Of a DNA stretch of 64,000 nucleotides, positions 2 through 27,922 are shown in pieces. Both the position numbers and the translations under genes were made by a program. The stretch covers positions 186,001 to 250,000 of IMG/VR virus record IMGVR_UViG_3300023202_000247; one strand, written 5' to 3'. Within the stretch, counting starts at the first letter, position 1. The number at the start of each line of letters is the position of its first letter. The notes below the pieces were generated by a model that worked only from the letters and a program-made list of their open reading frames with translations, was not told where the DNA came from and made no database searches.

Positions 2-421
2 TCTCAAATTGAAAAGGGCTTGGAAAGACTGCTTGATAGGTTGGAAAAGGTTCGTTCAACGAAGTTCAAAAGAAAAAGCAAGAAAAAGGCTTGGTATGAT
101 GTTGACGATAGTATCGTCAAAGAAGCTCAGAAATCTACAAGAATCAATGGTATTACAATAACAGTTCCATTATTTATCTCAACACTTGCTCGTACTTGTA
201 TCAACGGAATGGTGAGCGCAGGTCATGATATTGAAGATATGTTTCAAAAGCTTGCTAAGAGATACAATTTAACTCCGAGAGAAAAGGCTGAGCTAGTTCA
301 GCTTTTGAGAGATATGGGATATATGCATTCAACTTCTAGAGATAGAGGATTGGAGTTTAATGAAAAATTTGATCCGACATCGGAAGAAAACTTTGACTAT
401 GCGGCCAACTACTGGGGATAA
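2..421 (+). CDS. hypothetical protein, 5'-truncated by the window edge (probably head/packaging associated)
   Basis: The frame is open upstream of the TTG at 20 to the window start; it ends 3 nt before the next ATG and contains a VKEA motif. Confidence 0.6.
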   Translation, partial: SQIEKGLERLLDRLEKVRSTKFKRKSKKKAWYDVDDSIVKEAQKSTRINGITITVPLFISTLARTCINGMVSAGHDIEDMFQKLAKRYNLTPREKAELVQLLRDMGYMHSTSRDRGLEFNEKFDPTSEENFDYAANYWG

Positions 422-424
422 TAA

Positions 425-1081
425 ATGAGTAAAGCATTAAAAATTGATGTTCCTGTAACAAGGGATAAAAATGAAATAGAAAGATCGGGAAAGCTTAGCG
501 GTTGGCTTGCGGACTTTGCAGATCATTATAAGCAAATGGAATCGCAGCAAAAAACAGCTGTAGAAGTAAACACTGGCCCGTCTATTCAAGAGAAAATGCA
601 TGCCATTTTGAATGGCAATTCTCGCTACAACAACGTTGAAGAGGCTGTTGCGGATTTACACGAGCGCACCGGACTGAAACAATATTTGGAAGCTAAGGCT
701 TCTGATGTTTCAGATGCTGCTAAATATATTTTAGCAGATGATGAAGGTGGTGACGAAAAAAAAGCTGAAAGGCCGGCATTGCTAGAGCGAGTTCCTGCTA
801 TAGAGCATTACATTCGCAACATGGTGAACAATGGAGCTAGCTTGCCGGCAATACTATTTGGAATAGCTTCAACATTTGTACAAGATGGTGTAAGCGATCA
901 AGATATTGATGACATGGATCTTGCCAGATATATCAATCAGTTCATCATGTCCAGAGAACCATCTGAGACACCATTGGATGATCCAAACATTGGTAGAGAT
1001 GTTGGCCTCAAAGTTGATTTGCATGATGTTGATCAAAACAAAGACCCATTTGTCGGCTTGACTCCAAAAAAGGTAATGTAA
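425..1081 (+). CDS. hypothetical protein immediately upstream of large terminase (small terminase is a positional possibility only)
   Basis: 218 aa ORF, tightly packed, predicted helical; no diagnostic motif. Confidence 0.55.
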   Translation: MSKALKIDVPVTRDKNEIERSGKLSGWLADFADHYKQMESQQKTAVEVNTGPSIQEKMHAILNGNSRYNNVEEAVADLHERTGLKQYLEAKASDVSDAAKYILADDEGGDEKKAERPALLERVPAIEHYIRNMVNNGASLPAILFGIASTFVQDGVSDQDIDDMDLARYINQFIMSREPSETPLDDPNIGRDVGLKVDLHDVDQNKDPFVGLTPKKVM

Positions 1082-1112
1082 TCAATAATATGCATAATAT
1101 CAATTATTTTAT

Positions 1113-2963
1113 ATGGTTGATGTTAACATTAGTCCTTTAGATGCATTTAAAAGCAGCATTCTAAATTTAGATCCTGTTGCATTTTGCGAAAATAATTTGA
1201 CGCTTGATGGTCAACAGTTTCGTTTAACCAATAATGGTTACAAACCATTTGCTGATATTTATCGTTATATCGGCATCAAAGCTTTGGAGCCAGATGCATT
1301 GCCGGTAATTCTCGTTAAAGGCAGACAGGTGGGCGCAACTACGATGGCAGCTGCGCTTGCGTGTTATTTCATGGCCAGTAGGTTATTTGGAAATAACGGT
1401 AGGCCGCCAATGCGTGTGATTCACCTGTTTCCTACTTTGGGAATGGCAGCTGCTTATTCCAAAATGAAATTCAGCCAAATGGTTGGTTCTGCAAAGCCAG
1501 CTCCAGGTGAATTTAAAGGAAATGGTGCTCCAAAAACATATATAGAAAAAGAGCTTGATACTAGTAGCCCAGCTAATAACAACCTTCATTTCAAGAAATT
1601 TTTGGGTGATAACCAGTTGGAAATAGAAAGCACTGGTCCTGACGGAAACAGACTTCGTGGACGTACAACAGATTGTATTCTAGCTGATGAAGTTCAAGAC
1701 ATTCCACAGATAGCCCTTGGTGCTATTACCAAGACACTTACCAAGGCTCAATATGGTAAATCAGCGCAAGGTATTCAAGTTTATTTTGGAACACCAAAGC
1801 AAAAAGGTACAGCTTATTATAATATGTGGATGAAATCCACACAGCAATATTACCATTTAAAATGTGAAGAATGTGAATCTTATTTTCCGTTGTACAGACC
1901 AGATGTTGAATGGGAAAGTATATGGCTGTATGGTTACATCGTTAAATGTACCGAATGTGGACACGAGCAAGATAAGCGTGTAGCTGCTGAAAGTGGAAAG
2001 TGGATTAGTTTCAGAGCCGACGAGGAAGAGGCAAAATATGTTGGTTTTCATGTCAACCAATTATATATGCCAGATTTTACACGCGAGATGATTGACGCTC
2101 AACGTCCAGAAAACAACCCAATCAATACTGAACGTATTTATCAAAACGAGGTATTGGGTGAATTTTATGATGGTGAAGCTGCAACTATTACCAAAGAAGA
2201 GATTCACGAAAAATGTTCTGATAAGCGAAAATTTGCTAGAATTATAACTAGAATTGATAACCGTAAAGTTTATGCAGGATTTGACTGGGGTCAGCGTGGC
2301 AACCTTGATCAATTAGCCGGAAGACAAAGAGGGCAGAGTTACAGCTGTGCAGTTATTTTAACAGCTGAAAACAAGAATTTGTTTCACATTCAGTTTGCTA
2401 CAAAAATGAAAAGCGCTGATCCGGGGCACAAAGTTGAAGTTGTTGAAGAGATGTTTCGTAGATACAGCATCAATATGGCCGTTGGTGATATTGGTGATGC
2501 TCATGACTTAACACACATACTTCAAAGAAAGTGGCCTGATACATTTTTGGCAAGCCGTGCAGCTCCAAATGTCAACGGTCATATTAAATATGAAGATGAA
2601 ATATTTCCAAAAGAAATAGTTTTTGAGCGCAATTACTATATTTCAGAGTTAATTGGTTTGTTGAAAAATGGTAACATAAAATTTCCATATGGTAGTTATG
2701 AAAAAGTAATGTGGTTAGTAGAACATTGTGCAAGTATGGATGTTAAGGTTAATATAAATAGATCGGGAGATCCTGTTAAAACATATATAAAAGGACCAAC
2801 TCCAAACGATGGATTCATGGCTCTTTTAAATGCTTACATAGCGTATAAGTTTGACATCACCCAAGGTTTTCAAATTAGTCATCCTAAAGGGTTGAAATTC
2901 GATAATGCTAAGAGAAACAAAGGCGCTCCAGCGTTGTTGGGTTATATGCCAAAATGGAAATGA
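1113..2963 (+). CDS. terL: terminase large subunit (lambda gpA-like)
   Basis: Walker A-like KGRQVGATT, Walker B ILADEVQD, coupling motif GTP, Zn ribbon CEEC..CTEC, RNase H-like GFDWG and C-terminal ND; followed by the portal. Confidence 0.93.
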   Translation: MVDVNISPLDAFKSSILNLDPVAFCENNLTLDGQQFRLTNNGYKPFADIYRYIGIKALEPDALPVILVKGRQVGATTMAAALACYFMASRLFGNNGRPPMRVIHLFPTLGMAAAYSKMKFSQMVGSAKPAPGEFKGNGAPKTYIEKELDTSSPANNNLHFKKFLGDNQLEIESTGPDGNRLRGRTTDCILADEVQDIPQIALGAITKTLTKAQYGKSAQGIQVYFGTPKQKGTAYYNMWMKSTQQYYHLKCEECESYFPLYRPDVEWESIWLYGYIVKCTECGHEQDKRVAAESGKWISFRADEEEAKYVGFHVNQLYMPDFTREMIDAQRPENNPINTERIYQNEVLGEFYDGEAATITKEEIHEKCSDKRKFARIITRIDNRKVYAGFDWGQRGNLDQLAGRQRGQSYSCAVILTAENKNLFHIQFATKMKSADPGHKVEVVEEMFRRYSINMAVGDIGDAHDLTHILQRKWPDTFLASRAAPNVNGHIKYEDEIFPKEIVFERNYYISELIGLLKNGNIKFPYGSYEKVMWLVEHCASMDVKVNINRSGDPVKTYIKGPTPNDGFMALLNAYIAYKFDITQGFQISHPKGLKFDNAKRNKGAPALLGYMPKWK

Positions 2964-2979: not shown

Positions 2980-5900
2980 ATGAAGTCAAGAGCAGAACAG
3001 CTAATGGAGTGGAGAGCTTCAAATCCTCCACGAATTACTACAAGTAAAGGTTTGAGTGATTACAGAAAGTTTGCACTCGAACAAGATATTGAAAATGGTC
3101 GATATCAAGAAACAGCTTTTGGTAATCAACATAGAATGGGAGACCAAAATTTTCAGTTTAGCAACTACGTTTTGCCTTCCAAGCTTTCTGACTTTGCAGG
3201 AGATGGACCATCCATTGCTGGAGCCATCACATATAGCAGTAATCGAAAAAGAATAAAAAATGCTGCCGGTGGCGATGCTGGTGCATTTACAACTGATCAA
3301 TCTACATCATTAAATGGTGCAAACTCTGGCTGGAGGGGAATGACGAGCACCACTCGTCAGATACCAGAGGTTTATTCTCCATTGTGGCTCAACAGCAACC
3401 TAAACCTTCCAAGAGATAGAGCCACCATCAACGCTTGGTGCAGAACCTTTTTTGCTCTCAATCCGATCGTACAGAATGCAATCACTTTGCACTCAACATA
3501 TCCAATTGCCAAATTAAATATCAAATGTAAAGATCCTCAAAAAGAAAAGTTCTATGCTCAAATGGCAGAAGAACTTCAATTGATGAACATTTGCAGCCAA
3601 ATTGCACAAGAATTCTGGACGCTGGGAGAGTGCTTCGTATTTGCCGAGTATGATGAAAGAACGGCGAAGTGGAGCAGATTACTAATACAAAACCCAGATT
3701 ACATTACGGTTCAGCGTTCAACGCTTGCTGGAGAACCAATTATTTCGTTGCGTCCGGATGAAAACTTGAGACGTATGGTTAATTCTAATAGACCCGCTGA
3801 TATTCAACAGCGTCGACAGTTGAGCAAAGAAATAGTTGATCACGTTCGTAAAGGCGAAAACATTCCTTTGAATAATTTCAACATAAGTCATTTGGCTCGT
3901 CGCATATCACCATATGAGATTCGTGGTACCGGATTGATTGTAAATAGCTTTAGACAACTCATGTTATTTGATAAGCTTAGGGAGAGTAAATTTGCTCAAG
4001 CTGATAACATGATTAACCCACTTACACTTATTAAAATTGGTGATGTTGGTAAAGGATTTTTTCCAAACCCAAGCGATTTGCAACAATGGCGAGAGATATT
4101 TGAATGCCATGATGAAGAAACTGAGGTTTTAACAAGCGAAGGTTTCAAAAAATTAGAAGATGTTATTTCTTATGAAGAGAAGATGGATGGTACCTTTGGA
4201 ACATCTCACATAAGTAATGTATCTGCAAAACGCGGAGTAAAAATTGCGTGTTTTAATCCAGAAACAGAAAATTTGGAATATCATGAGCCATCAGAAGCAC
4301 ATATTTATAATTATCACGGTGAGATGATTCATTTCAAAAATGATAAAATGGATATCAAGGTAACACCAAATCATGATATGTGGGTTCAATCAAAGAAATT
4401 TACAGGTACTGGTAAAGATAGAACGTGGAAATGGGGAGATTGGAAAAAAATTCCTGCCGGTAAGCTTTCAGATAAACTTTGGGACAAACGTTTTAGATCA
4501 TCTGTTAAATGGGATGGCGATGATTCATTAAAAAATGTTGATGTAAGTGGTACACAAGTTCCTGCCGAATTGTATTTGGAAATGCTTGGATATGTCATCA
4601 GTGAAGGTTGCATATATTCAGATGATAACGATGCTTTTGTTGGAATTTATCAAAATACAAAATTAAACAACGGCTCTGTTAATGAACATTATCCAGTTAT
4701 GAAGCAGTGCGTTGAAAAGTTTTCATCGATTGTGAACAGTAGATACTGTTATGAAAAATGTACACCGGCATCAATAGAGAAAAACACACAGGAAAAGTGG
4801 TCATTCAGAATTCATTCCAAAGAAATATTTGCACATTTTAAAGAACAAGTTGGAACTGATGATGGGCACAAGTCAATGTTTAAAAAGGTTCCAAACTGGG
4901 TTTTGAATTTAAGTCCGAGACTTTTAAAAATATTATTGAACGCACTTGTTCGTGGAGATGGAAGTGATAATCCAAGAGAAAATTATTATACATCATCGAA
5001 AAGGCTTGCAGATGACGTATATGAAATAGCATATAAGTGTGGATATACTCCAACAATGTTTGTAAGAGATGATGACAATTATCTTTACAGATATGGTAAG
5101 TCTCAAGAGGCAAGAAATAAATTATATACGGTTTGTTGGTCAAACTCAGAAATTGGAAATTATCCAATAACTTATAAATATAATGTTGACCCACGTACGA
5201 AAGAAAAAAGAAATCTTGTTGAAAAAGTTCATTATAATGGCAAGGTATGGTGTTTTACTGTTCCAACTGGTTTATTCGTAACTAGACGAAATGGTAAAAT
5301 AACTATACAAGGAAATAGTGCACAATATGACAAAGATTTCAAGGTATTTACACATGACGGTGTAAGTGTTGAACGCATTGGATATGCTCAAGGAATTTAT
5401 GATATCAGCAATGACGTTCAGCAACTTATAAAAGAGATTTATATTGGACTCATGGTTCCATCTGTAGTCATGGATGGTTCAGATACTACTTATGCAACGG
5501 GTAGTGTTGCGCTCGATGTTTTGAGACAGCGTTACATGCAGTTTAGAAACATGTTGTCGCATTTCCTCAAAGAAAAGATTTTTGCACCAATTGCTAAACT
5601 AAACGATTTTTATGAATATGTTGATGGTGTCAAAACTTTAATCATTCCAGAGATTGATTGGAATCACATGTCTTTGTTCGACATGTCTGATTACATACAA
5701 AACATATCAAACCTTGCTCAAGGTGAAGGTCTTGCAAAGAAGGTTTCGTTGCAAACGTTATACAGAAGCCTTGGTCTAGAGTATGATGATGAGATGCGTA
5801 AAATTCGTTATGAAGATATTCAAGATACAATTCGTAGTAAAGAACTTGCCGCATTACAACAGTATCCATTGAACGAACTTCGTGCACTCGGTCGCGATGA

Positions 5901-6231: not shown

Positions 6232-7962
6232 ATGAACTTTATTGAAAAAATTGCGAGCTTAGAAGTAGAACTAAAAAAGTTTTCATCAACCGATAATTTT
6301 CAAATGTCGGTTGATGAATTCTGTTCTTTGTCCAGATTTTTGCTCGAGTCCGATGTCGAAACTCGTTTCGTTACGGCATTGGTTGAAGTTGTTGCTAAAA
6401 ATCCAAAAATTGTAAATATGGACGATGTTTTGGAGAATTCCAATATGATTCTCAGAGCTTTGTTCGATGAGCATTTCGAGGGCAAGATGTTTACAACGGC
6501 TCAGCGTCGTAGTTTGACTCAATGGCTTGGAGAGAAAGTAAATATTCCGCGTCATCTTGCTGAAACTTTCAATAGTGAAGTTTATGGAAAGCAGATGAAT
6601 CTTCTACGTGAAGTTGATGATGTTGTTCGTGATATTGCTAAAAAGATGCGCTCAGATTTGAAAGATATGAAGCGTGCAATGAAGCAAAGAAAATATCTAG
6701 ATGTTGCCCACTTTGTTGGAAACATCAATGATAAATTGAAAGAATTCAACAATGAGCTTTCGGTATTGAATAATAATCGTTCAGATAATATAGACGATTT
6801 TTATGGTGAATACGAATATGCTGATTTAGACAGAGATTATTTTGGTGAGGCGAAAGCTGCTAAAACACCGGAGCAAATTCTAAAAGAGGCAGGGATATGG
6901 GACTCTCTTTCTAGAAGTCAAGCGGCAAAATTGTTGGAAAAAATGTACAACAAGACGCTGGCGGAACGCAAGAGAGATATGCAAAAGTTGGTTAATAATA
7001 CCGAAAAAATGGTTGAACATACTTTAGGCAAACTAAAAGATATGGGTTCTTATCGTAGTAAAGGTGATATTAGTAAATATATTGCTGCGCTCGAGGATAT
7101 TGAAAAAAAGCGTTTAGCTTTTGAATCTCAATTTAGAAATACCTATCAACAGCATATCTCTCCCATGGTTGAACGTATGCGAGAAAGAAAGCAAGAGCAG
7201 AAGGATTTGGAAAGTGTTCGTGAGCAAGATGAGAAAACCAAAGATGAGATTCCTTCATTAGATCCTGATACGGTTGATCAAGAAACTGTTGAAATGGAAA
7301 CCAGGGTCAACGATCCCGACACTGAGCCAGGCGTTGCCCCAACGGAACCCGGTACGGATAGAGAACCATTACGCGATTTGGTCGATGAAGATGAAGAAAT
7401 TGAGCTTACACAAATAAGTCCTAAATATGAACCAGAGCCGGCTACTACTCCTGCTTCGTTACCACCATCTTCTAGAGAAGAGCCTAATAATGATGTTTCG
7501 TTTTCTCGTAGAAATATTGTTCCACCCGCTCCAGATTCTCCAGTGATACACGAAGCACCGGCTGAGGGCACTTATGGTTATTATGCTGAAAGACAAACTG
7601 ATGTTCCAACATCTTCGAAATTGGCTGATCCGAATTATCAGCTAAACGAAAATGATTTTTATGGTTATTGGAAACAATATGGTGAGCCGCCAAGAGTTCC
7701 AAAGAGTAGAATGCCACAAGTTAGAGAGTTGAGATTGATTCCAGATTATTGGCCCAACCCAGCTCCGAATGCTGGGTTCGAAGGTAGAGAGTTGGAGGCA
7801 TCATTTATAAATGAGATAATAAAACAGTCCAAAGATGCTGGGCATGATGATGTCGCAATTTCTGCAACATTCAAAACATTATCAAAAAAATTGAATGAGA
7901 CGGGAAATGAAACGGCCTCATTGCAAGCCCTTGCAATTGCAGAGGGTTTCGAAGATGCATGA
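6232..7962 (+). CDS. putative head-associated coiled-coil protein
   Basis: 576 aa; located in the head module; K-x-A motifs (EKIA, LKEA). Confidence 0.55.
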   Translation: MNFIEKIASLEVELKKFSSTDNFQMSVDEFCSLSRFLLESDVETRFVTALVEVVAKNPKIVNMDDVLENSNMILRALFDEHFEGKMFTTAQRRSLTQWLGEKVNIPRHLAETFNSEVYGKQMNLLREVDDVVRDIAKKMRSDLKDMKRAMKQRKYLDVAHFVGNINDKLKEFNNELSVLNNNRSDNIDDFYGEYEYADLDRDYFGEAKAAKTPEQILKEAGIWDSLSRSQAAKLLEKMYNKTLAERKRDMQKLVNNTEKMVEHTLGKLKDMGSYRSKGDISKYIAALEDIEKKRLAFESQFRNTYQQHISPMVERMRERKQEQKDLESVREQDEKTKDEIPSLDPDTVDQETVEMETRVNDPDTEPGVAPTEPGTDREPLRDLVDEDEEIELTQISPKYEPEPATTPASLPPSSREEPNNDVSFSRRNIVPPAPDSPVIHEAPAEGTYGYYAERQTDVPTSSKLADPNYQLNENDFYGYWKQYGEPPRVPKSRMPQVRELRLIPDYWPNPAPNAGFEGRELEASFINEIIKQSKDAGHDDVAISATFKTLSKKLNETGNETASLQALAIAEGFEDA

Positions 7963-9424
7963 AATAAGAAAAATAGCTCTAGAAATTTCAGCTGCTGACA
8001 AATTAGATGTTGTCAAAGTTGCAAGTATTCTTTCGAGAATTAAAAACTGGTGGCGTGCTTTAGGAGATCCGGAGTACAAAGCTCGTGTTGAAGAGTTGAA
8101 AGAAACATCTTCCAAATTTAAAAGTTTGCTAGATGAGGTTCAGCACAGTGTTGATAAACTTCAAAAAACTATAAGCGACACTGATGTTGAAAATTATGAT
8201 TCATCTTTGGAACAAATGCGTAGTGCGTTGTTAGCATTAAATGCTGAGATAGATGATGTGGAGCGTTCGGTGTCCAATGTTGAAGATGCCGCACAACCAG
8301 CAGCAAAACGAGAGAATGTACGCTGGAACTATACCCAGGAAGAGCTTGGTGATGAAAAGGTAGTTGACGAATTAAAAAGTCAGTTTCCAGAAGGTCATGA
8401 TGTTGTCGTAAGCAATAGGATAGAGAAACCGCTCAAGTCATTTGACTGGTTTAAAAAATTTGGGCCCGAAAATATTATCATAAGCGATCGTGTAGAAAAT
8501 ATCATCAACAAACAAGTTGCTGGTGCAATTGCTAAAAAACTTGCAATGTATGGCGACTGGAAGCAAGATTACTACATGTATCTTTTAAAGATGAAAGATC
8601 CAAATGTAGAGACTGAATTTCAAAACAAGTTAAAAGATGCCATATTGAATGGTACACTTGTTGAATATAATTTTGCAAAGCCAAGTAAAGAAGTAAAACA
8701 ACGTCAAGCAAATGAAGTTCATATGAGAGTTTTAACAAAGCCATTTTCATTTTCTATAAAAAGAGATGATGGTGCTACGTTAAACGTGAATGTATTTGCC
8801 AAGTGTTTATTAAATGATATGGCCGCTGCATATGTTGGACGAGACAATCTTGATATGATGGGATTTACAAATGTTCAAGTTGATCCAAATTTAGTTGGAA
8901 TAGTTGGTCCAGAACAACAGCCCGAACCAGAGTCGGATTTACCTCCGGAGGAATTTATGGATTATGAACAACAAGAGTATCCAGATGGAGATGATGGATT
9001 TGCTGACGATTTGCTCAGTTCTGCTGGTCCGATGGAAAGAATGGTATCACAAGCTTTAGCAAGAAAAGCTTTCAAACCAGTTGATTTTACCATCACATTG
9101 AGAGGTGAATCTTTCCACGTACAAAATAGATTTGCTAGAGTTTTAACATCAGCTTTGAGAGCTGAGCTGGGAGCAGAATCATCTGTTCGTTCCGACGGGA
9201 ATAGAATAGAGGTTGAGTGTACCGTTTACGGTCCGGAAAAAACCTCTACGAGTGCGGTCAAATCTCTTACTGAAGGAATATCAGAATTATTTGTTGAACA
9301 AAAAGGTTTCAACGTAAAAGCTTCTGTATATGAAAATGTAATAAGTAAGTATGCGATTATAAAAAATGAAATGAGCGAAGAGGCTTTTAGAAAATTTGCT
9401 CTTCACAATATGAGGAAACGATGA
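7955..9424 (+). CDS. putative head-associated protein
   Basis: Probable start at ATG 7955 (MHEIRKIA), overlapping the upstream gene end; contains VKVA followed by SILSRIKNWW. Confidence 0.55.
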   Translation: MHEIRKIALEISAADKLDVVKVASILSRIKNWWRALGDPEYKARVEELKETSSKFKSLLDEVQHSVDKLQKTISDTDVENYDSSLEQMRSALLALNAEIDDVERSVSNVEDAAQPAAKRENVRWNYTQEELGDEKVVDELKSQFPEGHDVVVSNRIEKPLKSFDWFKKFGPENIIISDRVENIINKQVAGAIAKKLAMYGDWKQDYYMYLLKMKDPNVETEFQNKLKDAILNGTLVEYNFAKPSKEVKQRQANEVHMRVLTKPFSFSIKRDDGATLNVNVFAKCLLNDMAAAYVGRDNLDMMGFTNVQVDPNLVGIVGPEQQPEPESDLPPEEFMDYEQQEYPDGDDGFADDLLSSAGPMERMVSQALARKAFKPVDFTITLRGESFHVQNRFARVLTSALRAELGAESSVRSDGNRIEVECTVYGPEKTSTSAVKSLTEGISELFVEQKGFNVKASVYENVISKYAIIKNEMSEEAFRKFALHNMRKR

Positions 9425-10040: not shown

Positions 10041-10353
10041 TAAAAATATGTTCGAGCGCAGAGTGAAGCTTGCTCAAATGACGTTGAACATGGGTGATCC
10101 GTCATTGGCTGGTCGTGGAATTGCTGACATCGTCAAATTTTTGATGCAACGTGTACCACCAGAAGATTACAAACGTTTATTGGGCAGATTGAGACAAAAA
10201 GTTCATTCTTTAAATGAAAGAGAAATTGCAAGTATAAATTTGAACTCAGGCTCTGCAATAGGACAGTCTATTACATTTATCAAAAATGTTTTGATGGGAC
10301 ATAATTCTACATACATTCGACAAGTTATAAACAATATAGTGAGAAATTTATAA
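10027..10353 (+). CDS. hypothetical helical protein
   Basis: Overlapping, coupled gene; contains VKLAQ. Confidence 0.6.
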   Translation: MTIIDKNMFERRVKLAQMTLNMGDPSLAGRGIADIVKFLMQRVPPEDYKRLLGRLRQKVHSLNEREIASINLNSGSAIGQSITFIKNVLMGHNSTYIRQVINNIVRNL

Positions 10354-12166: not shown

Positions 12167-12318
12167 TAATTAAGAAGAGCAAAGTAAAAATAGTTGATGT
12201 TATCAAAGATGATGAACATGATATAGATGATGAAGGAACGCGCGATGCTATGAAACGCGCATCTGATGAATTGGAACAAGAGAAGAAAGGCGTCTCTAAA
12301 AAAGATATGGTGAATTGA
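12163..12318 (+). CDS. small acidic protein (51 aa, not in the ORF track)
   Basis: MIIKKSKVKIVDVIKDDEHDIDDEG...; ATGA overlap upstream and TGATG overlap downstream fill the gap exactly. Confidence 0.65.
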   Translation: MIIKKSKVKIVDVIKDDEHDIDDEGTRDAMKRASDELEQEKKGVSKKDMVN

Positions 12319-19570: not shown

Positions 19571-22500
19571 ATGACTTTGAAGCATGTAAAATTTCACCAA
19601 AGCGAAGTGATGCGCGAGTTGGAAAGACAAGCAACTCGTAAAGGCCACTTCGAACCATCTCCAAAAGAAACTGTTGATGCAGCTGCAAACAAAGCAGCGC
19701 AAAGCTTCATACCAACCAGAACTGGTAATTGGTATAATGATACGATGAACTTAGTTACCGCTCTTCGCAATGCTGGTTATGAAAAATCAGCTGCGGATAT
19801 CGAGGAGAAGGCTACGAACATGAAATTTGCCGAAGTTCATTTGTACAAGGCAATTGATGAAGATGGCGATGCTTTCATGGATTATGCTCATCCGGAAGGC
19901 GACACGGAGATAATTCCGGCTCAAGACGGGCGAGGAAAAGTTGAAAGAACAACCACAACTCATGACAAGATGCTGGATGTTTTGCACAAAAAGCCAACTG
20001 GAAAGCTTTCTGGAGAGGCTAATTTTGTTTTGAATCGTGAGGTCAAAGAAGCCGCTTTGGATGTTTTAAAAACGGCCCAAGATGTGGGTGTGATTGACAA
20101 GATTAAAAAAAAATTTGAATCTATTCAAAATATAATAAACAATGCTGGTAGTATCGTATCTGATATATCATTAAATTTTGGAAATATAATAAATAAAATA
20201 TTTCATGGTAATGCATCTGCCGTTGCATTGTATGTAAAGTATTCAGATGCTACGATGCAACAACTGCAAAATTTAATATACGCTTATAGATTCTTTTATT
20301 GGAATGGTTCCAAGTATGTAGTTAATACAAAGCAAGCAAACAGTGTAATTAGCTCACATGCTTTAAAGAATCAAAATGCATTGAGAGCAGCTTGCAAAGC
20401 TGTAGGTGTTGATGCTGATCCATATCTCAGAGCGCCTGATGGTTCAGGCTCGGTACCTCTCACATCTGCAAATAAGGCGGCAGAACTTGCTGGTAAGGTA
20501 TTGGCAGGTACCAATCATCTTTGGAACATGACATTTGGAGACTCTATTGTTAGAGAGGCAAATGAAAACTTGAAGAAAGTTTATAATGCTTTTGTTGCAG
20601 AGATGAAAACAAGTTTGCCAGTAACATCAGAGGGTATTTTTGATCGTGGTGAAATTAACTATTCTGTAGCTGTGAATAAACTAAGAAATGCAAGAAAATC
20701 ACTAGATTCAGTTTATGAACAGGGAAGCAATGCATCCAAGTTGTTTGAAATATACGAGGTATTTTCGGCGGATGAGGCGATGAATTTGCAAAAGATATTT
20801 ACCGATTTGAAGTCCAATATCGATGAAGCATTGAAGCTCATCGTAACTCAAAGCAAACAATATGGAAAAACATTCGAAGGTATCAACAGCTGGATATCTC
20901 AGGTTGCGCGTCTAAAGAAATTGTCTTTGGAGCAACGCGCAGCTTTGCCCGAAGGTTCCGAGGAACGCAAGGCAGCATATACCAACTATATAGCTGCAAA
21001 AAAAATGGAAAGCATTCTCAATGGTTTGAAAGGTAAGAGCTGGCTCGAGATTCGTTCTGTTTTGCAAGAGAACTATCAACTATATGAAACGCCAGAAGAC
21101 TTTCAAAAAGATATCGATTCCTTCAAGGCAAAGGTTTTGGGAAAAGGTGAGTCAGCAGAGGCTTCTGACGGACTTGCAACAGTTGCATCTTTGGTAAAAG
21201 CAGCCGGAGCATTTGGTGATCAGGCAAAAACTATAAAGCCTGTTTCAACAAAAACAGAACCAAAAGCAGCTCCAAAATCCACACCGGGGCAGTCGGTTCA
21301 ACGCAAAGGTCCGGTAGCAACATCTGCGGTTCCAGAAGAGGAGCAACGAGCGGTTGCACAAATGCAAAAGGTTCTCACCGAGATTTCAACTCAAATGACG
21401 CAAAATGCTGAAAACATCGCGCGTGATTTGGCACCGATGCATGACCAATCATTGCGCGGATTAACACCCGATCAGGTAAGACAGAGTGCTGCTGTAATTG
21501 GAGCAACCGGCAAGGGAACTGGTACACCTTTCGATGGTCTATGGGGTCCAAAAACTATTCGTGCTTTAGAAGAAGTAAATAGTTATGTCCAACGTGTAAA
21601 CAAATTGGAAGGTAAAAATTTACCAGCTGTGCTTCCCGGTAGCCATTATCGTCAAACAGACACCAGTAAAACGCTAGAAGATGCTGATGCGAATGTTACT
21701 GCTTTACTTGAATTTAGCAAAACAATGGGATTCAGTGTTACTGGTCCAGATGGTAGCAAGACTGAAATATCTGATTACGATCATATTCCGCAAACGTTGA
21801 CTCGCCAAAATGTTTTGGATACTGGTGATTTGACTGTTCGAAGTGTTGATGTTCAATCTTTGGAAGCATTTTATGCGTTTCTCGAGCACACCATCAATCG
21901 TACAGCAAACACAAATGCAGAGTTGGTATCCAAGGGACAGTATGGTGAAATTACTGATACTGATCAATCTGGAAAGAAAACAACTCATACCATTCGCACA
22001 ACACTTGATGATGAGCCAAAACAAGAGGGGTTTGGAACAGTTACTTGGAGACAGTTTAATGACTATCTAAAGTGGTTCGCTTATCGTGTAAACATGTTGT
22101 ATAGCAAAGCAAAGCGTGAAGGCGCTGATGCTGCTGATGTTCAAAGACTAACAGCATACAAAGATTCAATCGATGCTTTGAGTATCAAATGGTTGAAGCT
22201 CAAGCGTTGGCTCGAGCAAAACAGAGTTGATTTGGATAAATCATACGTTAGCTTTGAAGCTTTGAAAATTGTTGATACTCACCTTGGACGAAGCGGTCGC
22301 GGTCGTGAAGTTGGTGTAGGTAGAGGTAGAGGTAGAGGTAGAGGTAGAGGTAGAGGTAGAGGTAGAGGTAGAGGTAGAGGTGAAGGAGATATGGAGGGTT
22401 ACCAATATTATGATCCGGGTGTTGTCGGTGGAAGAAGCGGGCCGCTTTATGCTCCATTTTCAAATAATATGAATATGATTCAAATTGCTAAAGATTTTGG

Positions 22501-22849: not shown

Positions 22850-24033
22850 TGAATGATGGTATTTTACAGTACTATTCAGATACGCTTCTAATAGAGAAGT
22901 GGGCAAATGTTGATGCGGCATTGGACATGCGCAAAAGCGCAGGTGTGCTTGATTCAATCGTATCAGGCGCAAAAGGTTTTATAGAAAACTTCGTTGTTGA
23001 TAGATTGGACAAAAGCTCTCCATTAGCTTTTGGTGAAAGTGTATTAAAGCTATTAGCTCCAAGTATTTTGTTTAGACTTTGGCCACCACTTGGTTTGTTG
23101 GAAACAGCAGGTCAAATGCTTTTTGGAATGAGCGTTGTCGATATAATCAAATCTATAGTTTCTGCACTTGCTCCTAAAATTAGCTCAAGTGAAATTATCA
23201 CACCAGAAGAGGTTAACCAAGCAGGTGTGCAGGCAGCGGGCGGTGATTTGCTCGTTAGTGCAAGTACAGATTTGTTGTATCCACTACGCGAATTGGAAAG
23301 AAACGACTCTATAGTTAAAGCGGCTCAAGCCGGCTCTAGAAGCTACAGAGGTTTTCTTGGAGGTAGAAGTCCAGCTGGCGGTGCATTTTTGCGCCCTCAA
23401 AAGGGAACCCCTGCTCTCTATCGAATGCTTGGTTTTTTGGGACCACGAAAAGGTAAAACATTAATTGTAGGTTTTATTGTATGGCTAATCAAAACTGTTC
23501 TAGCAAGTGCAGGTTTGCTCGCTGGTGGAAGCATCATTTCGGGATTGTTTGGCAAGGACAAAGAAAAAGAAACTGAACAAGAGGTTGTTGTTGAAAAATC
23601 AGAGAAAGAGCCGCGACCTTGGGCAGCACCATATCAACAAGATGGTCGTAAAGTATGGAACGTGTCTGAGACAACTCCGGCATCTTATCAAAGACCTGTT
23701 AGATTGCCAAGTGGTAGTTCGCATAATTTGAAACCAAGTGGTGCTGGTGAGAAATTCAACAAAAACGATAGCGCTACTATTTGGATTGTTCCACTGAAAG
23801 GTGGAGTGGAAAACACGGTGTTGAGCTGGGCAACTACTGTATATCCAGAGCTTCAGGGTCATGAAAATGCGATTAGACGCTCACCTTCATTCAATAGAAC
23901 TGTAAATATATTAGAGGGTCATACGGATCCACGCTCACCAAACTACTTATCGATGCCTTCAGGAGTAAACAAGATACGAGATGTTGTAGACTCTTTCGCC
24001 GGAGATGTTGCATCTAAAATTCCAAAAGGATAA
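22849..24033 (+). CDS. putative internal virion/ejection protein with hydrophobic helices
   Basis: Hydrophobic segment LIVGFIVWLIKTVLASAGLLAGGSIISGLFG; RKSA and VKAA motifs. Confidence 0.55.
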   Translation: MNDGILQYYSDTLLIEKWANVDAALDMRKSAGVLDSIVSGAKGFIENFVVDRLDKSSPLAFGESVLKLLAPSILFRLWPPLGLLETAGQMLFGMSVVDIIKSIVSALAPKISSSEIITPEEVNQAGVQAAGGDLLVSASTDLLYPLRELERNDSIVKAAQAGSRSYRGFLGGRSPAGGAFLRPQKGTPALYRMLGFLGPRKGKTLIVGFIVWLIKTVLASAGLLAGGSIISGLFGKDKEKETEQEVVVEKSEKEPRPWAAPYQQDGRKVWNVSETTPASYQRPVRLPSGSSHNLKPSGAGEKFNKNDSATIWIVPLKGGVENTVLSWATTVYPELQGHENAIRRSPSFNRTVNILEGHTDPRSPNYLSMPSGVNKIRDVVDSFAGDVASKIPKG

Positions 24034-24035
24034 AA

Positions 24036-25100
24036 ATGCCAATTATTGAATCAGAAGTATTTGAAGAATATTTAAAGCAATCGGAAAGTGAAGGTCTGGT
24101 AAAAAAGGCAGATTATTCTGAAGCACGCATAGGCTCTGACAATGATGATGTTATATCGCTACTCTATGGTATCAAACCAAACGATAAGGAAGATGACAAA
24201 AGTATTGTTGAAAAGGCTCATTCAGAAACAGCTGTTGTTGGTCCTGCTTATGATGCAATGAATGCAATTGTTGAAAATGTTCAACAGCGTCAAAACATGA
24301 TGGCTTATATTGCGCACAAAACTCCAAGTGGTGATTTGACGATGCGCAGATATGTAAAAGCAAAATCTGAGTTAATTGATTCTATCGTTAGAGCAGGTTT
24401 CGAGCTGGACAATGATAACAACGTTGATTTGATGAAATTCGCAGATCAATGTGTTGGAGACGTAACGAAGCAAGCAGCTTTCTGGATTCCAATTGCAGGA
24501 GCGGCTTTGGCGTTACTTGGCACTGTAGCATGGATAAATAACACAGATGATGTTGTTCAAAACATATACGCAAACTCTGAAAGAGTTATTAACGAGTTAG
24601 AGGATATACAAGAAGAATTTCCAAAGGTATCTTATATCATAAAAGATTTGCGTAATCTACAATCCAAATATGAAAAATATGTTCCGGCAAAACAGAATCT
24701 TTCCGTTTTAGCTTCTGGCGTTGGAAGTGCTGATGATTTAGTTGCAATTGCTGCTGAAGGCAAAGATAGCATTGCTGTTATAGAAGATTATGTGAATGAG
24801 CTTCAGAAAATCAAACCAAGACTAATCCGTTTTGCTTCGATGTTAAATAGCATGCCTCAAAAAGAATGGACGTATGATTGGTTGGCAAAATTAGACGAGG
24901 TTCGTAAGTATCTCGTTCCAGATGACTATAAAGATGTTATTTTGTCAATAAATGGTCTTGTGTCAACAATTGATGTTTCTTTGAAAAATGCTCAGCAGGC
25001 TATGAGTATAGCTTCTCGTTATTCTCATCAAATAAATGATGCTGCTAAAAATGTTGAAGAAGGTAATGTTGGTTCATTCGTAAATGAATATGAGGTTTGA
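24036..25100 (+). CDS. putative internal virion/ejection protein with one TM-like helix
   Basis: TKQA followed directly by AFWIPIAGAALALLGTVAWI; shares an N-terminal module with 19571. Confidence 0.55.
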   Translation: MPIIESEVFEEYLKQSESEGLVKKADYSEARIGSDNDDVISLLYGIKPNDKEDDKSIVEKAHSETAVVGPAYDAMNAIVENVQQRQNMMAYIAHKTPSGDLTMRRYVKAKSELIDSIVRAGFELDNDNNVDLMKFADQCVGDVTKQAAFWIPIAGAALALLGTVAWINNTDDVVQNIYANSERVINELEDIQEEFPKVSYIIKDLRNLQSKYEKYVPAKQNLSVLASGVGSADDLVAIAAEGKDSIAVIEDYVNELQKIKPRLIRFASMLNSMPQKEWTYDWLAKLDEVRKYLVPDDYKDVILSINGLVSTIDVSLKNAQQAMSIASRYSHQINDAAKNVEEGNVGSFVNEYEV

Positions 25101-26757: not shown

Positions 26758-26771
26758 TAGCTGAATGAAAA

Positions 26772-26805
26772 CGGGGCACCCGCCCAGGGTGCCCCATTTA
26801 TTTTT
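26772..26805 (+). terminator. terminator-like hairpin between the decoration and major capsid genes
   Basis: GGGGCACCC-GCCCA-GGGTGCCCC followed by ATTTATTTTT. Confidence 0.65.
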
Positions 26806-26908
26806 ACTTTAGATTTATATATTGCTCGTTTCGGCGAGATAATAATAAAACAAAATGGCTATTGATTTCAATCGGATAGTCTCACCCCAACAACAATACG
26901 GAGAATAA

Positions 26909-27922
26909 ATGAGTTTATTTACCCAATCAGGCGAGTCGAATGGAGTTAGCGTAAAGGACGCTCTCGACACTCTCGTCAAATATGCAGCAATTATTGAAGA
27001 GAATCAGCCGTCCAATGCGGCTCTCGCTGGTCGTCCAAGTTTGAACGACGACAAGCGTGATGAGTTGATTTCTCGCGCAATCCTAACTAACGAGGGTAAG
27101 GTTGCTCTTGCTCAGGCAATGGCCAACCCAATTCGTCGCAACCTTGATTACCAGGGTATTGCACGTCGTGCCCTAGTCGTTGATCCACTACCACAGGGTG
27201 CAACTCCAACATATGACCGTGATATCGACGTTGCGGCAGTTGTGGTTTCCAGCAATGGTGCTGGTCCTGAGAGCCGTGTGTTCGGCGACCGCGTGGTTGT
27301 TCCAACATTCGAGCTTTTGTCGAACCCAACCGTTCGTATCTCTGAGGTACGTCGTCGTAGGTTCAACGTAATTGACCGTGCCGTTCAGAAGGCGCGTCAA
27401 GAGATCATGGCGCAAGAGGACGCGAACATTTTCGCAGCTCTTGATAACGCTGGTACCGTCGAAAACACCGCACAGGATATTTCGGATGGTGGTCTGTTGA
27501 AGCGTGACCTTGTTGAAATCAAGGTCCAGATTGATCGCTGGGACCTTGTAACAACCAAGTTCTTCATGAACATCAATGAGTTTACTGATATCCTCAACTG
27601 GGGATCCGGCGGTGGTCAGGGACCAACCGGTGGTGAGGTAGACCCGGTTACTCAGCGTGAAATTCTACAGACTGGTTTGTACGCTCACATCTGGGGCGCG
27701 GACCTCATGGTCTCGAAGATCGTTCCACCTGGCACTGTTTACGGTTGTGCAGACCCAGAGTTTGTGGGTGTGATGCCGATTCGCCAGGACATTGAGGTTA
27801 TGCCTGCGGACGAGCCGAAACAGCTAAAACTAGGTTGGGTTGTTTCCGAGGAAATCGGAATCGGCATCGTCAACGCTCGCGGTGTTGCTCTTGGTCGCAA
27901 GAGCACCGTAGTTGGCGCGTAA
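26909..27922 (+). CDS. major capsid protein (HK97 fold)
   Basis: GGAG SD; LDYQGIARRALVVDPLPQG..YD, IMAQED, TGLYAHIWGADLMVSKIVPPGTVY; biased codon usage; followed by a terminator. Confidence 0.9.
   Translation: MSLFTQSGESNGVSVKDALDTLVKYAAIIEENQPSNAALAGRPSLNDDKRDELISRAILTNEGKVALAQAMANPIRRNLDYQGIARRALVVDPLPQGATPTYDRDIDVAAVVVSSNGAGPESRVFGDRVVVPTFELLSNPTVRISEVRRRRFNVIDRAVQKARQEIMAQEDANIFAALDNAGTVENTAQDISDGGLLKRDLVEIKVQIDRWDLVTTKFFMNINEFTDILNWGSGGGQGPTGGEVDPVTQREILQTGLYAHIWGADLMVSKIVPPGTVYGCADPEFVGVMPIRQDIEVMPADEPKQLKLGWVVSEEIGIGIVNARGVALGRKSTVVGA

What the first reader, a model, noticed from the sequence alone, without database searches (positions are those of the whole stretch)
20..27100. Pervasive K-x-A motif in head proteins: candidate prohead-protease processing code
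Seen: (hydrophobic)-K-x-A recurs densely in head-module proteins, often at domain boundaries. Examples: IVKEA, IKNA, EKIA, LKEA, VKVA, VKLA, LKRA, KKNA-YFQG, FKGA, PKGA, VKSA, KQA-Q four times in the scaffold, EKTA, IKTA, EKSA, LKTA, VKAA twice, RKSA, VKKA, TKQA, and VKYA near the capsid N-terminus. Established: T4 gp21 and phiKZ gp175 process many head proteins at short motifs ending in Glu. Inference: the protease at 12318 cleaves after K-x-A, a different specificity, removing propeptides and exposing new N-termini (for example the hydrophobic helix directly after TKQA in 24036).
Basis: partly seen in the sequence, partly recalled or inferred. Interest (0 to 1): 0.65.

Follow-up and report, generated by a model that had tools for sequence, protein, structure and literature searches.

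The report
Head-protein K-x-A processing motif
In this giant phage, a relative of Bacillus phage G, head proteins carry a conserved lysine-x-alanine tag near their start and around the head protease, most likely the site where that protease trims them, and this specificity differs from those known in other phages.

Summary
The window is the head and tail module of a 321-kb megaphage related to Bacillus phage G. The K-x-A observation holds, but most listed instances are chance.

- **Overall excess:** head proteins have 82 K-x-A against 56 expected (z about 3.8). The rest of the window has 29 against 31, and the rest of the genome is close to expectation.
- **Where the excess sits:** 14 of about 20 head-module proteins have K-x-A within their first 45 residues, against 4.9 expected. 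It ranks first of 902 motifs (family-wise p about 0.01). About 15 sites are conserved in families that are only 24-38% identical.
- **Who lacks it:** terminase, the decoration protein, a phosphatase-domain protein and three others.
- **Extended consensus:** hydrophobic (P5), x, K, x, A (rarely G), then A/Q/E/G.
- **Replication:** phage G head genes show 60 against 35 (z 4.6). Only portal, protease and capsid protein are detectably homologous between the two phages.
- **Anatomy:** sites flank the protease domain and pepper its fused scaffold.

Best reading: a recognition and cleavage motif of the prohead protease, a new specificity variant of a known mechanism. Cleavage itself is not shown, and the fold model and complex model gave nothing usable. 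Semi-specific re-analysis of phage G virion mass spectra would decide it.

The parts
12315..15860 (+). 1181-aa protease-scaffold fusion protein. The protease domain spans about residues 40-250, with invariant His133, Ser184 and Asp206 and a CCCH zinc knuckle (C194, C197, C208, H210). It is followed by a helical hairpin, P/G/Q-rich repeats carrying N-K-x-[AG]-Y-[FY]-Q-G, an acidic linker and a K/A/Q-rich scaffold-like C-terminal half.
   Evidence: PHROG 18299 'head maturation protease' E 7.7e-13. 33% identity to phage G gp19. Invariant columns in A1. hhalign places T4 gp21 H85 and S140 on H133 and S184, at E 0.1. 21 K-x-A against 11.7 expected.
12417..12425 (+). K35-F-A37, a conserved site N-terminal to the protease domain (F-K-K-F-A).
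   Evidence: K and A both kept in 91% of 35 orthologues. P5 is Phe in 100%.
13185..13193 (+). K291-L-A293, the site just after the protease domain and its helix. Candidate C-terminal self-cleavage site.
   Evidence: 40 of 60 relatives have K-[LIFM]-A-[DE] at the end of the equivalent helix, just before a hypervariable stretch. Phage G gp19 has EKVA|S and LKIA|S in the same place. The window's own copy aligns elsewhere because of an insertion.
13425..13433 (+). K371-N-A373 in the repeat N-K-x-[AG]-Y-[FY]-Q-G. A second copy of the repeat at residues 465-471 reads K-E-S-W-F-Q-G.
   Evidence: K 100%, P1 G 50% / A 47%, then Y-F/Y-Q-G in 97-100% of orthologues.
14199..14207 (+). K629-G-A631|Q, a conserved site in a poorly conserved linker.
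   Evidence: K and A both kept in 86%, against 16% mean residue conservation in the flanks.
14754..14792 (+). K814-Y-A816 and K824-S-A826, two conserved sites at the start of the scaffold-like domain.
   Evidence: K and A both kept in 97% and 100%.
15159..15167 (+). K949-Q-A951|Q, scaffold site.
   Evidence: Kept in 100% of orthologues.
15336..15344 (+). K1008-Q-A1010|Q, scaffold site.
   Evidence: Kept in 100% of orthologues, with flanks at 29%.
15711..15719 (+). K1133-Q-A1135|Q, scaffold site.
   Evidence: Kept in 71%.
26978..26986 (+). K24-Y-A26 in the major capsid protein (26909-27922). It lies in a 41-residue N-terminal extension that phage G gp27 lacks. The predicted mature N-terminus is Ala27.
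   Evidence: L-V-K-Y-A is kept in nearly all of 80 related capsid proteins, with K replaced by R in two. Phage G gp27 aligns only from window residue 45 and has no K-x-A. The whole N-terminus is conserved, so this site alone is not diagnostic.
3256..3264 (+). K93-N-A95|A in the portal protein (2980-6195), in the N-terminal S/G-rich linker before the conserved portal core.
   Evidence: Most sampled relatives (15 of 18 rows) have K-x-[AG] at about residue 70-100 of the portal, usually followed by Q, in low-complexity sequence. Phage G portal has QRKMA|S at residue 55. This is positional, not column-exact, conservation.
6247..6255 (+). K6-I-A8 at the N-terminus of the 576-aa head protein (6232-7962).
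   Evidence: 88% of 49 orthologues at a median 24% identity have K-x-A in the first 45 residues, mostly M-[QDN]-K-x-A-Q, against 27% expected.
6883..6891 (+). K218-E-A220|G, an internal conserved site in the same protein.
   Evidence: K and A both kept in 89%, flanks at 25%.
8015..8023 (+). K41-V-A43|S in the 7895-9424 protein. This is residue 21 if the true start is the Met at ORF residue 21.
   Evidence: The three relatives sharing this N-terminus read IVKVA|G, LVKLA|G and IIKVS|G.
10066..10074 (+). K14-L-A16|Q in the 108-aa protein (10027-10353).
   Evidence: Kept in 100% of 11 orthologues, flanks at 23%.
551..559 (+). K43-T-A45|V in the 218-aa protein (425-1081).
   Evidence: 5 of 6 orthologues at 26-33% identity carry K-x-A at the equivalent place.
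19691..20077 (+). K41-A-A43|Q, K85-F-A87 and K167-T-A169|Q in the N-terminal part of the 1092-aa head protein (19571-22849).
   Evidence: 81% of 21 orthologues have an N-terminal K-x-A against 39% expected, typically [IV]-[VI]-K-x-A-[AS]. K85 is kept in 67% and K167 in 57%, with flanks at 17-27%.
22933..22941 (+). K29-S-A31|G in the 394-aa head protein (22849-24033). This is the clearest case.
   Evidence: In alignment A2 (33 sequences, 27% mean column identity) K29 is the only invariant column, and A31 is kept in at least 90%. The two exceptions read K-x-G.
23317..23325 (+). K157-A-A159|Q, a second conserved site in the same protein.
   Evidence: K and A both kept in 79%, flanks at 14%.
24102..24110 (+). 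K23-K-A25|D in the 354-aa protein (24036-25100).
   Evidence: All 47 orthologues have an N-terminal K-x-A, usually F-V-K-I-A at residue 10-15. The window has K-Q-S at that column and a new V-K-K-A nine residues downstream, which is motif turnover.
24468..24476 (+). K145-Q-A147, immediately followed by a conserved hydrophobic helix of about 20 residues (AFWIPIAGAALALLGTVAWI).
   Evidence: K and A both kept in 77% after a linker variable in length and sequence. The hydrophobic helix follows in all 16 rows shown.

Best explanation
K-x-A, more fully hydrophobic(P5)-x-K(P3)-x-A(P1) followed by a small or polar residue, is the recognition motif of this phage's prohead protease (protease domain of the 12315-15860 protein).

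Proposed sequence of events:
1. Head-interior and shell proteins are made with N-terminal propeptides that end in the motif. These include the portal, the capsid protein, the protease-scaffold protein and several proteins of unknown function.
2. After prohead assembly the protease cuts after the Ala and removes the propeptides.
3. It frees itself from the fused scaffold, and cuts the scaffold at its many internal sites so the fragments can leave.
4. This exposes new N-termini, for example a hydrophobic helix in the 24036 protein.

Shown here: the motif is over-represented only in head-module proteins, concentrated at their N-termini, conserved as an island in otherwise divergent orthologues, placed around the protease domain and throughout the scaffold, and over-represented again in the head genes of phage G.

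Inferred: that the motif is cut, that this protease does it, and that the scissile bond follows Ala. The last point rests on the P5/P3/P1 alternation expected of a substrate bound as an extended strand, and on the P3-x-P1 layout of the T4, phiKZ and herpesvirus motifs.
For: - **Head-specific excess:** 82 against 56, z 3.7-3.8, rank 2 of about 1200 motifs. The rest of the window has 29 against 31. The genome profile peaks at the head module.
- **N-terminal concentration:** 14 of 20 proteins against 4.9 expected, with 13 control motifs flat. The rest of the genome has 51 of 272 against 49.5. Rank 1 of 902 motifs, family-wise p about 0.01.
- **Proteins without an N-terminal K-x-A:** terminase, the decoration-protein homologue (26068), a phosphatase-domain protein (10353), a weak peptidoglycan-binding hit (25097), and 18084 and 18767.
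- **Orthologue retention at low identity:** 88% against 27% expected, 91% against 18%, 100% against 37%, and 81% against 39% in four families at 24-34% median identity.
- **Clearest case:** K29 is the only invariant column in A2.
- **Pair retention:** K-x-A pairs are kept twice as often as seven other K/A spacings (0.247 against 0.111, p 0.007).
- **Extended logo:** P5 is L/F/I/M/V in 86%, P3 is K in 94%, P1 is A in 88%. The excess lies in the hydrophobic-x-K-x-A subset: 29 against 13.3, z 4.4. The non-hydrophobic subset has 46 against 40, and the rest of the genome 98 against 90.
- **Phage G gp1-27:** K-x-A 60 against 35 (z 4.6) and hydrophobic-x-K-x-A 26 against 9.6 (z 5.5). gp28-65 show nothing. 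Only portal, protease and capsid protein are BLAST-homologous to the window.
- **Phage G protease gp19** carries LVKTA|A and VVKIA|P before the domain and EKVA|S and LKIA|S after it.
- **Precedent:** N-terminal propeptides, scaffold shredding and protease C-terminal self-cleavage in T4, phiKZ and SPN3US.
Against: - No proteomic or biochemical data on any of these proteins could be reached.
- The phage G capsid paper with virion mass spectrometry is not held.
- The protease assignment rests on a PHROG match and a non-significant hhalign. Pfam and PDB sequence searches found nothing. The AlphaFold model was poor, with pLDDT 57.6.
- The protease-substrate complex prediction gave no verdict.
- Some conserved K-x-A lie in well-conserved helices or strands and may be structural. 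Examples are K-I-A-P before the protease core and the capsid N-terminal helix.
- Phage G's N-terminal test alone is weak (8 of 22 against 4.5, p 0.047), and its capsid protein has no propeptide.
- The distant relative Rctr197k shows the excess only in its protease-scaffold protein.
Confidence: 0.62

Rival explanations
1. K-x-A is a head-specific docking or capsid-targeting signal, bound by scaffold, portal or shell during prohead assembly. It is not itself cleaved, or the cut lies elsewhere, for example after the Lys.
For: The N-terminal position and head restriction fit a targeting sequence as well as a cleavage site. T4 internal proteins use N-terminal capsid-targeting sequences. No cleavage data exist here.
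Against: - In T4 the N-terminal sequences of the internal proteins are removed as propeptides by gp21, so targeting and cleavage coincide.
- Many conserved sites lie inside the scaffold domain and flank the protease domain, where a targeting role makes little sense.
- The P5/P3/P1 alternation is what a protease substrate strand would show.
Confidence: 0.17
2. The excess is a structural or compositional by-product. Head and scaffold proteins are rich in amphipathic helices where hydrophobic-x-K-x-A arises without any dedicated function, and conservation merely reflects descent.
For: Several conserved sites lie in regions that are well conserved overall, with flank conservation of 0.4-0.9. K and A are both helix formers. 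The aggregate ranking over 80 related loci is only 78th of 1252.
Against: - Shuffling within 30-residue windows, or within the N-terminal 45 residues, keeps local composition and the excess persists.
- Seven other K/A spacings are not enriched or retained.
- Islands such as K29/A31 sit in 12-27% conserved surroundings.
- Motif turnover is seen in the 24036 family.
- The excess recurs in phage G proteins that are not detectably homologous.
- The rest of the genome, which also holds helical proteins, shows none.
Confidence: 0.1
3. The motif is cut or modified by another enzyme: a host protease, another phage protease, or a lysine-modifying or cross-linking activity acting on the invariant Lys.
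For: The invariant residue is a Lys, which is a common modification or cross-link site. Phage G encodes ClpP/ClpX that are found in particles.
Against: - The motif is restricted to genes clustered around the prohead protease.
- It brackets that protease's own domain in both the window phage and phage G.
- Nothing in the window resembles a second protease.
Confidence: 0.06

Closest known systems
T4 gp21 prohead protease and its (L/I)-x-E cleavage motif
   Same: - A three-residue P3-x-P1 motif.
- N-terminal propeptides on shell, vertex and internal proteins.
- The scaffold is cut into fragments.
- The protease gene lies between portal and capsid genes next to the scaffold.
- hhalign puts T4 His85 and Ser140 on the invariant His133 and Ser184 here.
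   Different: - P1 is Ala (rarely Gly), not Glu. P3 is Lys, not Leu/Ile. There is an extra hydrophobic P5.
- The protease is fused to a scaffold-like protein of about 900 residues and carries a CCCH zinc knuckle.
- Sequence similarity to gp21 is not statistically significant (E 0.1).
phiKZ gp175, 201phi2-1 and SPN3US gp245 (MEROPS S80) with (S/A/G)-x-E or A-x-E motifs
   Same: - A giant-phage setting with many head proteins processed.
- Almost all cuts give N-terminal propeptides, plus a C-terminal self-cleavage of the protease.
- Extra motif copies occur inside propeptides.
   Different: - Those enzymes cut after Glu. Here the conserved residue at that place is Ala and the P3 residue is Lys.
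- No detectable sequence match.
- A different phage lineage (phage G-like, HK97-type capsid protein with a lambda-like decoration protein).
Herpesvirus assemblin, maturational and release sites (V/L/I)-x-A|S (from memory of the literature, not checked here)
   Same: - Ala at P1, with a P3 determinant two residues upstream and a small residue after the cut.
- The protease is fused to the scaffold and frees itself by self-cleavage.
- The same protease superfamily as phage prohead proteases.
   Different: - P3 is hydrophobic in herpesviruses but Lys here.
- P1' is not restricted to Ser.
- Many substrates rather than the protease-scaffold alone.
Bacillus phage G gp19 (candidate prohead protease) and its head module
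   Same: - 33% identical protease domain and the same zinc-knuckle cysteines.
- The same motif before and after the domain.
- The same head-specific K-x-A excess.
   Different: - In phage G the protease (300 aa) is a separate gene from the scaffold candidates.
- The capsid protein has no N-terminal extension and no K-x-A.
- The other head genes are not detectably homologous.

Membership tests
Prohead (head maturation) serine protease, HK97 gp4 / T4 gp21 / herpesvirus assemblin superfamily | Significant match to a curated family model | tested here: inconclusive
   PHROG 18299 'head maturation protease' E 7.7e-13 over residues 118-214. tblastn hits to genes annotated as prohead core or head maturation protease in Dickeya JA29 (3e-7) and Pseudomonas HRDY3 (1e-5). 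No Pfam family, even at E 10. No PDB sequence match with protein or profile.
Prohead (head maturation) serine protease, HK97 gp4 / T4 gp21 / herpesvirus assemblin superfamily | Catalytic His and Ser (plus Asp/His/Glu) conserved and alignable with a solved member | tested here: inconclusive
   His133, Ser184 and Asp206 are invariant or at least 90% conserved in 25 relatives. hhalign to T4 gp21 aligns them with T4 His85 and Ser140, but at E 0.1 and probability 0.6%.
Prohead (head maturation) serine protease, HK97 gp4 / T4 gp21 / herpesvirus assemblin superfamily | Assemblin-like fold | tested here: inconclusive
   AlphaFold2 model has mean pLDDT 57.6. Foldseek found nothing at E <= 0.001; T4 gp21 5jbl (E 0.47), HCMV protease (E 1.3) and pseudorabies protease (E 1.5) appear only among weak hits. 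The VIA-align list is filled by the helical hairpin.
Prohead (head maturation) serine protease, HK97 gp4 / T4 gp21 / herpesvirus assemblin superfamily | Gene lies in the head module between portal and major capsid protein, next to or fused with the scaffold | tested here: met
   Terminase 1113-2963, portal 2980-6195, protease-scaffold 12315-15860, capsid protein 26909-27922.
Prohead-protease cleavage-motif systems (T4, phiKZ, SPN3US type) | Short P3-x-P1 motif recurring in many head proteins and not elsewhere | tested here: met
   for the window's genome. for phage G.
Prohead-protease cleavage-motif systems (T4, phiKZ, SPN3US type) | Motif bounds N-terminal propeptides, flanks the protease C-terminus and recurs in the scaffold | tested here: met
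   14 of 20 N-termini. A site after the protease domain in 40 of 60 relatives and in phage G. Five conserved sites in the scaffold half. This is positional evidence only.
Prohead-protease cleavage-motif systems (T4, phiKZ, SPN3US type) | P1 residue is glutamate | tested here: not met
   The conserved third position is Ala 88% and Gly 6%. E-x-A and hydrophobic-x-E-x-A are not enriched. So it works like these systems but is not a member of the Glu-specific group.
Prohead-protease cleavage-motif systems (T4, phiKZ, SPN3US type) | Mature virion proteins begin at the residue after the motif | not testable with these tools
   Needs virion mass spectrometry or N-terminal sequencing. No supplementary peptide data are held, and the phage G capsid paper is not held.
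Herpesvirus assemblin-type specificity (V/L/I)-x-A|S | Ala at P1, hydrophobic P3, Ser at P1' | tested here: not met
   P1 Ala is shared, but P3 is Lys in 94% and P1' is A/Q/E/G rather than Ser. The herpesvirus consensus is quoted from memory.

The most novel reading that the evidence does not exclude
Hydrophobic-x-K-x-A is a clade-wide head-processing code of phage G-like megaphages. It would let the packaged, and possibly ejected, head proteome and its mature termini be read from sequence alone. One substrate family (24036) would be a latent membrane-inserting protein whose hydrophobic helix is unmasked only by this cleavage inside the capsid.
Probability: 0.35. Interest if true: 0.7.

Novelty: new variant of a known kind. 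Interest (0 to 1): 0.6.

Why it matters
Head maturation by a prohead protease is well known, but its cleavage code has been read for only a few lineages (T4, phiKZ-like phages, HK97, herpesviruses). Those read for giant phages (T4, phiKZ-like) cut after Glu.

A Lys/Ala code in the phage G lineage, the largest cultured phage and its many uncultured soil and sediment relatives, would have four consequences:
- It would show that specificity in this protease superfamily has shifted towards the herpesvirus-like Ala P1.
- It would give a sequence-only way to pick head-interior proteins and their mature ends among hundreds of unannotated megaphage genes.
- It would flag candidate ejection proteins.
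- It can be tested directly with phage G virions and existing mass-spectrometry data.

Tried and rejected
- **Nucleotide search:** megablast of 18 kb against 50,697 phage records found nothing.
- **Family and sequence searches on the protease:** Pfam gave no family for the protease or for most head proteins. PDB sequence searches with protein and profile gave nothing relevant.
- **Protease structure:** the AlphaFold2 model of the protease domain had pLDDT 57.6. Foldseek against PDB gave no significant match. VIA-align wide was dominated by the post-domain helical hairpin. The fold is therefore not established.
- **Complex prediction:** protease domain with the 22849 N-terminus gave no verdict, score 0.01. 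This is neither for nor against binding.
- **Aggregate motif ranking over 80 related loci:** K-x-A ranks 78 of 1252. This was rejected as a test because conserved homologous residues dominate the counts.
- **Distant relative Rctr197k:** K-x-A excess appears only in its protease-scaffold protein (13 against 7.9) and there is no clear N-terminal pattern. Inconclusive.
- **Literature:** no paper in the library has 'K-X-A' with capsid, protease and phage. A jumbo-phage review has nothing on maturation proteases. The phage G capsid and mass-spectrometry paper (JMB 2020) is not held. The 2025 phage G multi-omics paper has no held supplements. An earlier report of this specificity therefore cannot be excluded.
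- **Signal peptidase reading:** considered and dropped, because no hydrophobic signal peptide precedes the sites.
- **Translation-start codon bias:** this could only touch the two sites within the first 8 residues. Twelve of 20 proteins keep a site beyond that.

Full report
**What the window is**

All long ORFs lie on the + strand. The window is bases 186001-250000 of a 321-kb IMG/VR virus record estimated 75% complete.

Its capsid protein (26909-27922) is 55% identical to the major head protein gp27 of Bacillus phage G. It is 24-34% identical to capsid proteins of other large phages.

The head module reads as follows:
- large terminase, 1113-2963
- portal, 2980-6195
- a 1181-aa protein at 12315-15860, whose residues 106-214 match PHROG 18299 'head maturation protease' at E 7.7e-13
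- several proteins without annotation
- a homologue of the phage G decoration-protein position, 26068-26757
- the capsid protein

About 190 related uncultured contigs, several of 340-480 kb, carry the same protease or capsid gene.

K-x-A is short, and composition alone predicts about 56 copies in these proteins.

The observed number is 82:
- z is 3.7 with whole-protein shuffles and 3.8 with shuffles confined to 30-residue blocks.
- With local shuffles K-x-A ranks second of about 1200 gapped dipeptides.
- A-x-K, K-A, A-K, K-x-x-A, K-x-x-x-A, R-x-A and E-x-A are all at expectation.
- The remaining genes of the window have 29 against 31.

In 20-kb bins across the genome, the bin containing the start of the head module has the highest observed/expected ratio, 1.69. 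Elsewhere the ratio is 0.8-1.26, with one bin at 1.53.

So the excess is about 26 sites.

**Where the excess sits**

The excess is concentrated at N-termini.
- 14 of 20 head-module proteins of at least 100 aa have K-x-A in their first 45 residues.
- Only 4.9 are expected when just those N-terminal residues are shuffled, and 0 of 3000 shuffles reach 14.
- None of 13 control motifs is enriched.
- The other 272 proteins of the genome show 51 against 49.5.
- In an unbiased scan of 902 motifs on 21 proteins, K-x-A is first at z 5.08, at about the 99th percentile of the shuffled maximum. L-K, V-K and K-x-x-Q also appear in the top ten.

The six proteins without an N-terminal site are:
- the terminase
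- the decoration-protein homologue (26068)
- a tyrosine-phosphatase-domain protein (10353)
- a protein with a weak peptidoglycan-binding hit (25097)
- the 18084 and 18767 proteins

Some of these, such as the terminase and the decoration protein, would not be expected inside a prohead.

**Conservation in relatives**

I called ORFs in 160 related loci and grouped them by BLAST to the window's proteins. The N-terminal motif is kept in families that have otherwise diverged strongly:

| Family | Median identity | With N-terminal K-x-A | Expected |
|---|---|---|---|
| 6232 | 24% | 88% | 27% |
| 22849 | 25% | 91% | 18% |
| 24036 | 33% | 100% | 37% |
| 19571 | 34% | 81% | 39% |
| 425 (n = 6) | 29% | 5 of 6 | 1 of 6 |

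The terminase, 18084, 18767, 25097 and 27982 families stay at or below expectation.

- In the tool-made alignment of the first 70 residues of 33 members of the 22849 family (27% mean column identity), K29 is the only invariant column. A31 is kept in at least 90%. The two exceptions read K-x-G.
- In the 24036 family the window has lost the usual F-V-K-I-A and gained V-K-K-A nine residues further on. This is turnover typical of short linear motifs.
- Portals of most sampled relatives carry K-x-[AG], usually followed by Q, at about residue 70-100, in an S/G-rich stretch ahead of the conserved core. The window has I-K-N-A|A at residue 93.
- Across all head families, both residues of a window K-x-A pair are kept in orthologues twice as often as for seven other K/A spacings (0.247 against 0.111; 24% against 10% of sites kept in at least half; p 0.007).
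- About 15 sites stand out as islands. Examples are K629 of the protease protein (86% kept, flanks 16%) and K157 of the 22849 protein (79%, flanks 14%).

**The motif**

At 15 conserved sites the weighted logo is:
- P5: L/F/I/M/V, 86%
- P4: often V, R or I
- P3: K, 94%
- P2: any residue
- P1: A 88%, G 6%
- P1': A, Q, E or G

The enrichment in the window's head proteins lies almost wholly in the hydrophobic-x-K-x-A subset: 29 against 13.3, z 4.4. K-x-A without a hydrophobic P5 gives 46 against 40. In the rest of the genome hydrophobic-x-K-x-A is at expectation, 98 against 90.

Determinants at P5, P3 and P1 point to one face of an extended strand. This is how substrates lie in serine protease clefts (general knowledge, inference).

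**Independent replication in phage G**

Using the motifs fixed beforehand:
- Phage G gp1-gp27 have 60 K-x-A against 35.1 (z 4.6).
- They have 26 hydrophobic-x-K-x-A against 9.6 (z 5.5).
- Eight control motifs are flat.
- gp28-gp65 next door show 24 against 21.8.

Only portal, protease and capsid protein of phage G are BLAST-detectable homologues of window proteins. The excess in gp4, gp5, gp7, gp9, gp11, gp13, gp20 and gp21 is therefore not inherited from shared sites.

The phage G protease gp19 reads LVKTA|A and VVKIA|P before its domain and EKVA|S and LKIA|S after it.

The N-terminal test alone is weaker in phage G (8 of 22 against 4.5, p 0.047). Its head region is interrupted by non-head genes. 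Its capsid protein lacks the 41-residue extension of the window's protein and has no K-x-A.

**The protease-scaffold protein**

Relatives have the same roughly 1200-aa architecture. The layout is:
- The protease core has invariant His133, Ser184 and a nearly invariant Asp206.
- Four invariant zinc-knuckle residues are C194, C197, C208 and H210.
- A helix after the core ends in K-[LIFM]-A-[DE] in 40 of 60 relatives, just before hypervariable sequence.
- Two repeats follow with N-K-x-[AG]-Y-[FY]-Q-G.
- A linker contains the K629 island.
- A K/A/Q-rich scaffold-like half has sites at 814, 824, 949, 1008 and 1133, kept in 71-100% of orthologues.

This layout matches what a self-releasing protease fused to a scaffold destined for degradation would need. 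It parallels T4, phiKZ and SPN3US, where the protease removes N-terminal propeptides, shreds core proteins and trims its own C-terminus.

**How firm is the protease assignment?**

- Pfam and PDB sequence searches gave nothing.
- The AlphaFold2 model was poor, pLDDT 57.6.
- Structure searches were uninformative. T4 gp21 and two herpesvirus proteases appeared only among non-significant Foldseek rows. The VIA-align list was dominated by a helical hairpin.
- hhalign of the family profile against T4 gp21 is not significant (E 0.1). It does place T4 His85 and Ser140 on the invariant His133 and Ser184.

I take the assignment as likely but not proven.

**Verdict**

The interpretation passes every test available here, but cleavage itself is inferred.

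- The best explanation is a prohead-protease recognition and cleavage motif, hydrophobic-x-K-x-A|small/polar (confidence about 0.6).
- The main rival is a non-cleaved targeting signal.
- A purely structural by-product is unlikely, given local-composition controls, spacing controls, turnover and replication in non-homologous phage G proteins.

Compared with known systems, it works like the T4 and phiKZ motifs but fails their defining Glu at P1. It shares Ala at P1 and the protease-scaffold fusion with herpesvirus assemblin, but has Lys rather than a hydrophobic residue at P3.

I found no report of this specificity in the searchable library. The phage G capsid paper that includes virion mass spectrometry could not be read, so priority cannot be judged with certainty.

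The complex prediction gave no verdict and is not used as evidence.

Noticed in passing
window 4105-5316 (portal residues 376-779): The portal gene carries an insertion of about 404 residues, absent from most relatives, whose portals have a median length of about 619 aa. It begins C-H-D-E-E-T-E-V-L-T and ends I-Q-G-N followed by Ser. It contains two LAGLIDADG-like blocks (LLEMLGYVISEG, LLNALVRGDGS). This looks like an intein with a homing endonuclease. Some relatives have portals of 1137-1411 aa with a similar insert. Pfam gave no hit. The K421-I-A site lies inside it and should not be counted as a head-protein site.
   Followed up: partly
window 12894-12944 (protease residues 194-210): An invariant C-x-x-C ... 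C-x-H cluster (C194, C197, C208, H210) is inserted in the protease domain between the candidate catalytic Ser184 and the end of the core. It is also present in phage G gp19 (CSICG...FCDH). It is probably a zinc knuckle, and I know of no counterpart in T4 gp21.
   Followed up: partly
window 10353-11462: A 369-aa protein in the middle of the head module has an N-terminal tyrosine-phosphatase-family domain (PF03162, E 1e-13). It lacks the N-terminal K-x-A.
   Followed up: no
window 24477-24536 (24036 protein residues 148-167): A conserved hydrophobic helix of about 20 residues follows the K145-Q-A147 site directly in all 16 aligned family rows shown. It is preceded by a linker variable in length. 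If cleaved there, the mature protein would start with a membrane-like helix, which makes it a candidate ejection or pore protein.
   Followed up: partly
window 13422-13445 and 13701-13727: Two copies of a repeat N-K-x-[AG]-Y-[FY]-Q-G (KKNAYFQG and SKESWFQG) are each followed by P/G/Q-rich sequence with RDT-[QE]-DKQMVGQ-x-PFPGVG. The Y-F-Q-G part is 97-100% conserved in relatives. Its role is unknown.
   Followed up: no
window 1-421 and genome 160000-186000 (upstream of the window): The first ORF of the window is the end of a 310-aa gene that starts 512 bases upstream of the window (genome 185489). The K-x-A excess continues upstream: 64 against 46.5, and hydrophobic-x-K-x-A 22 against 12.3, in genome 160-186 kb. 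The clearest cases are the proteins at genome 178493-180133, 181629-183536 and 184909-185460. The head module probably begins before the window.
   Followed up: partly
window 27982-30048: A 688-aa ORF directly after the capsid gene combines helix-turn-helix hits, a LAGLIDADG domain (PF14528, E 8e-6) and a weak DNA methylase match at its C-terminus. It may be a mobile endonuclease element inserted between head and tail genes.
   Followed up: no
window 7895-9424: The longest ORF overlaps the previous gene by 68 bases. Relatives align from its residue 21 (MHEIRKIA...), so the true start is probably at 7955. The C-terminal part is shared with many shorter proteins that have different N-termini, which suggests a modular family.
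   Followed up: no
L001 (phage G) 23289-24137 compared with window 26909-27031: Phage G's capsid protein starts 41 residues later than the window's, with stop codons just upstream in frame, and contains no K-x-A. The two phages appear to differ in whether the capsid protein has a propeptide.
   Followed up: partly
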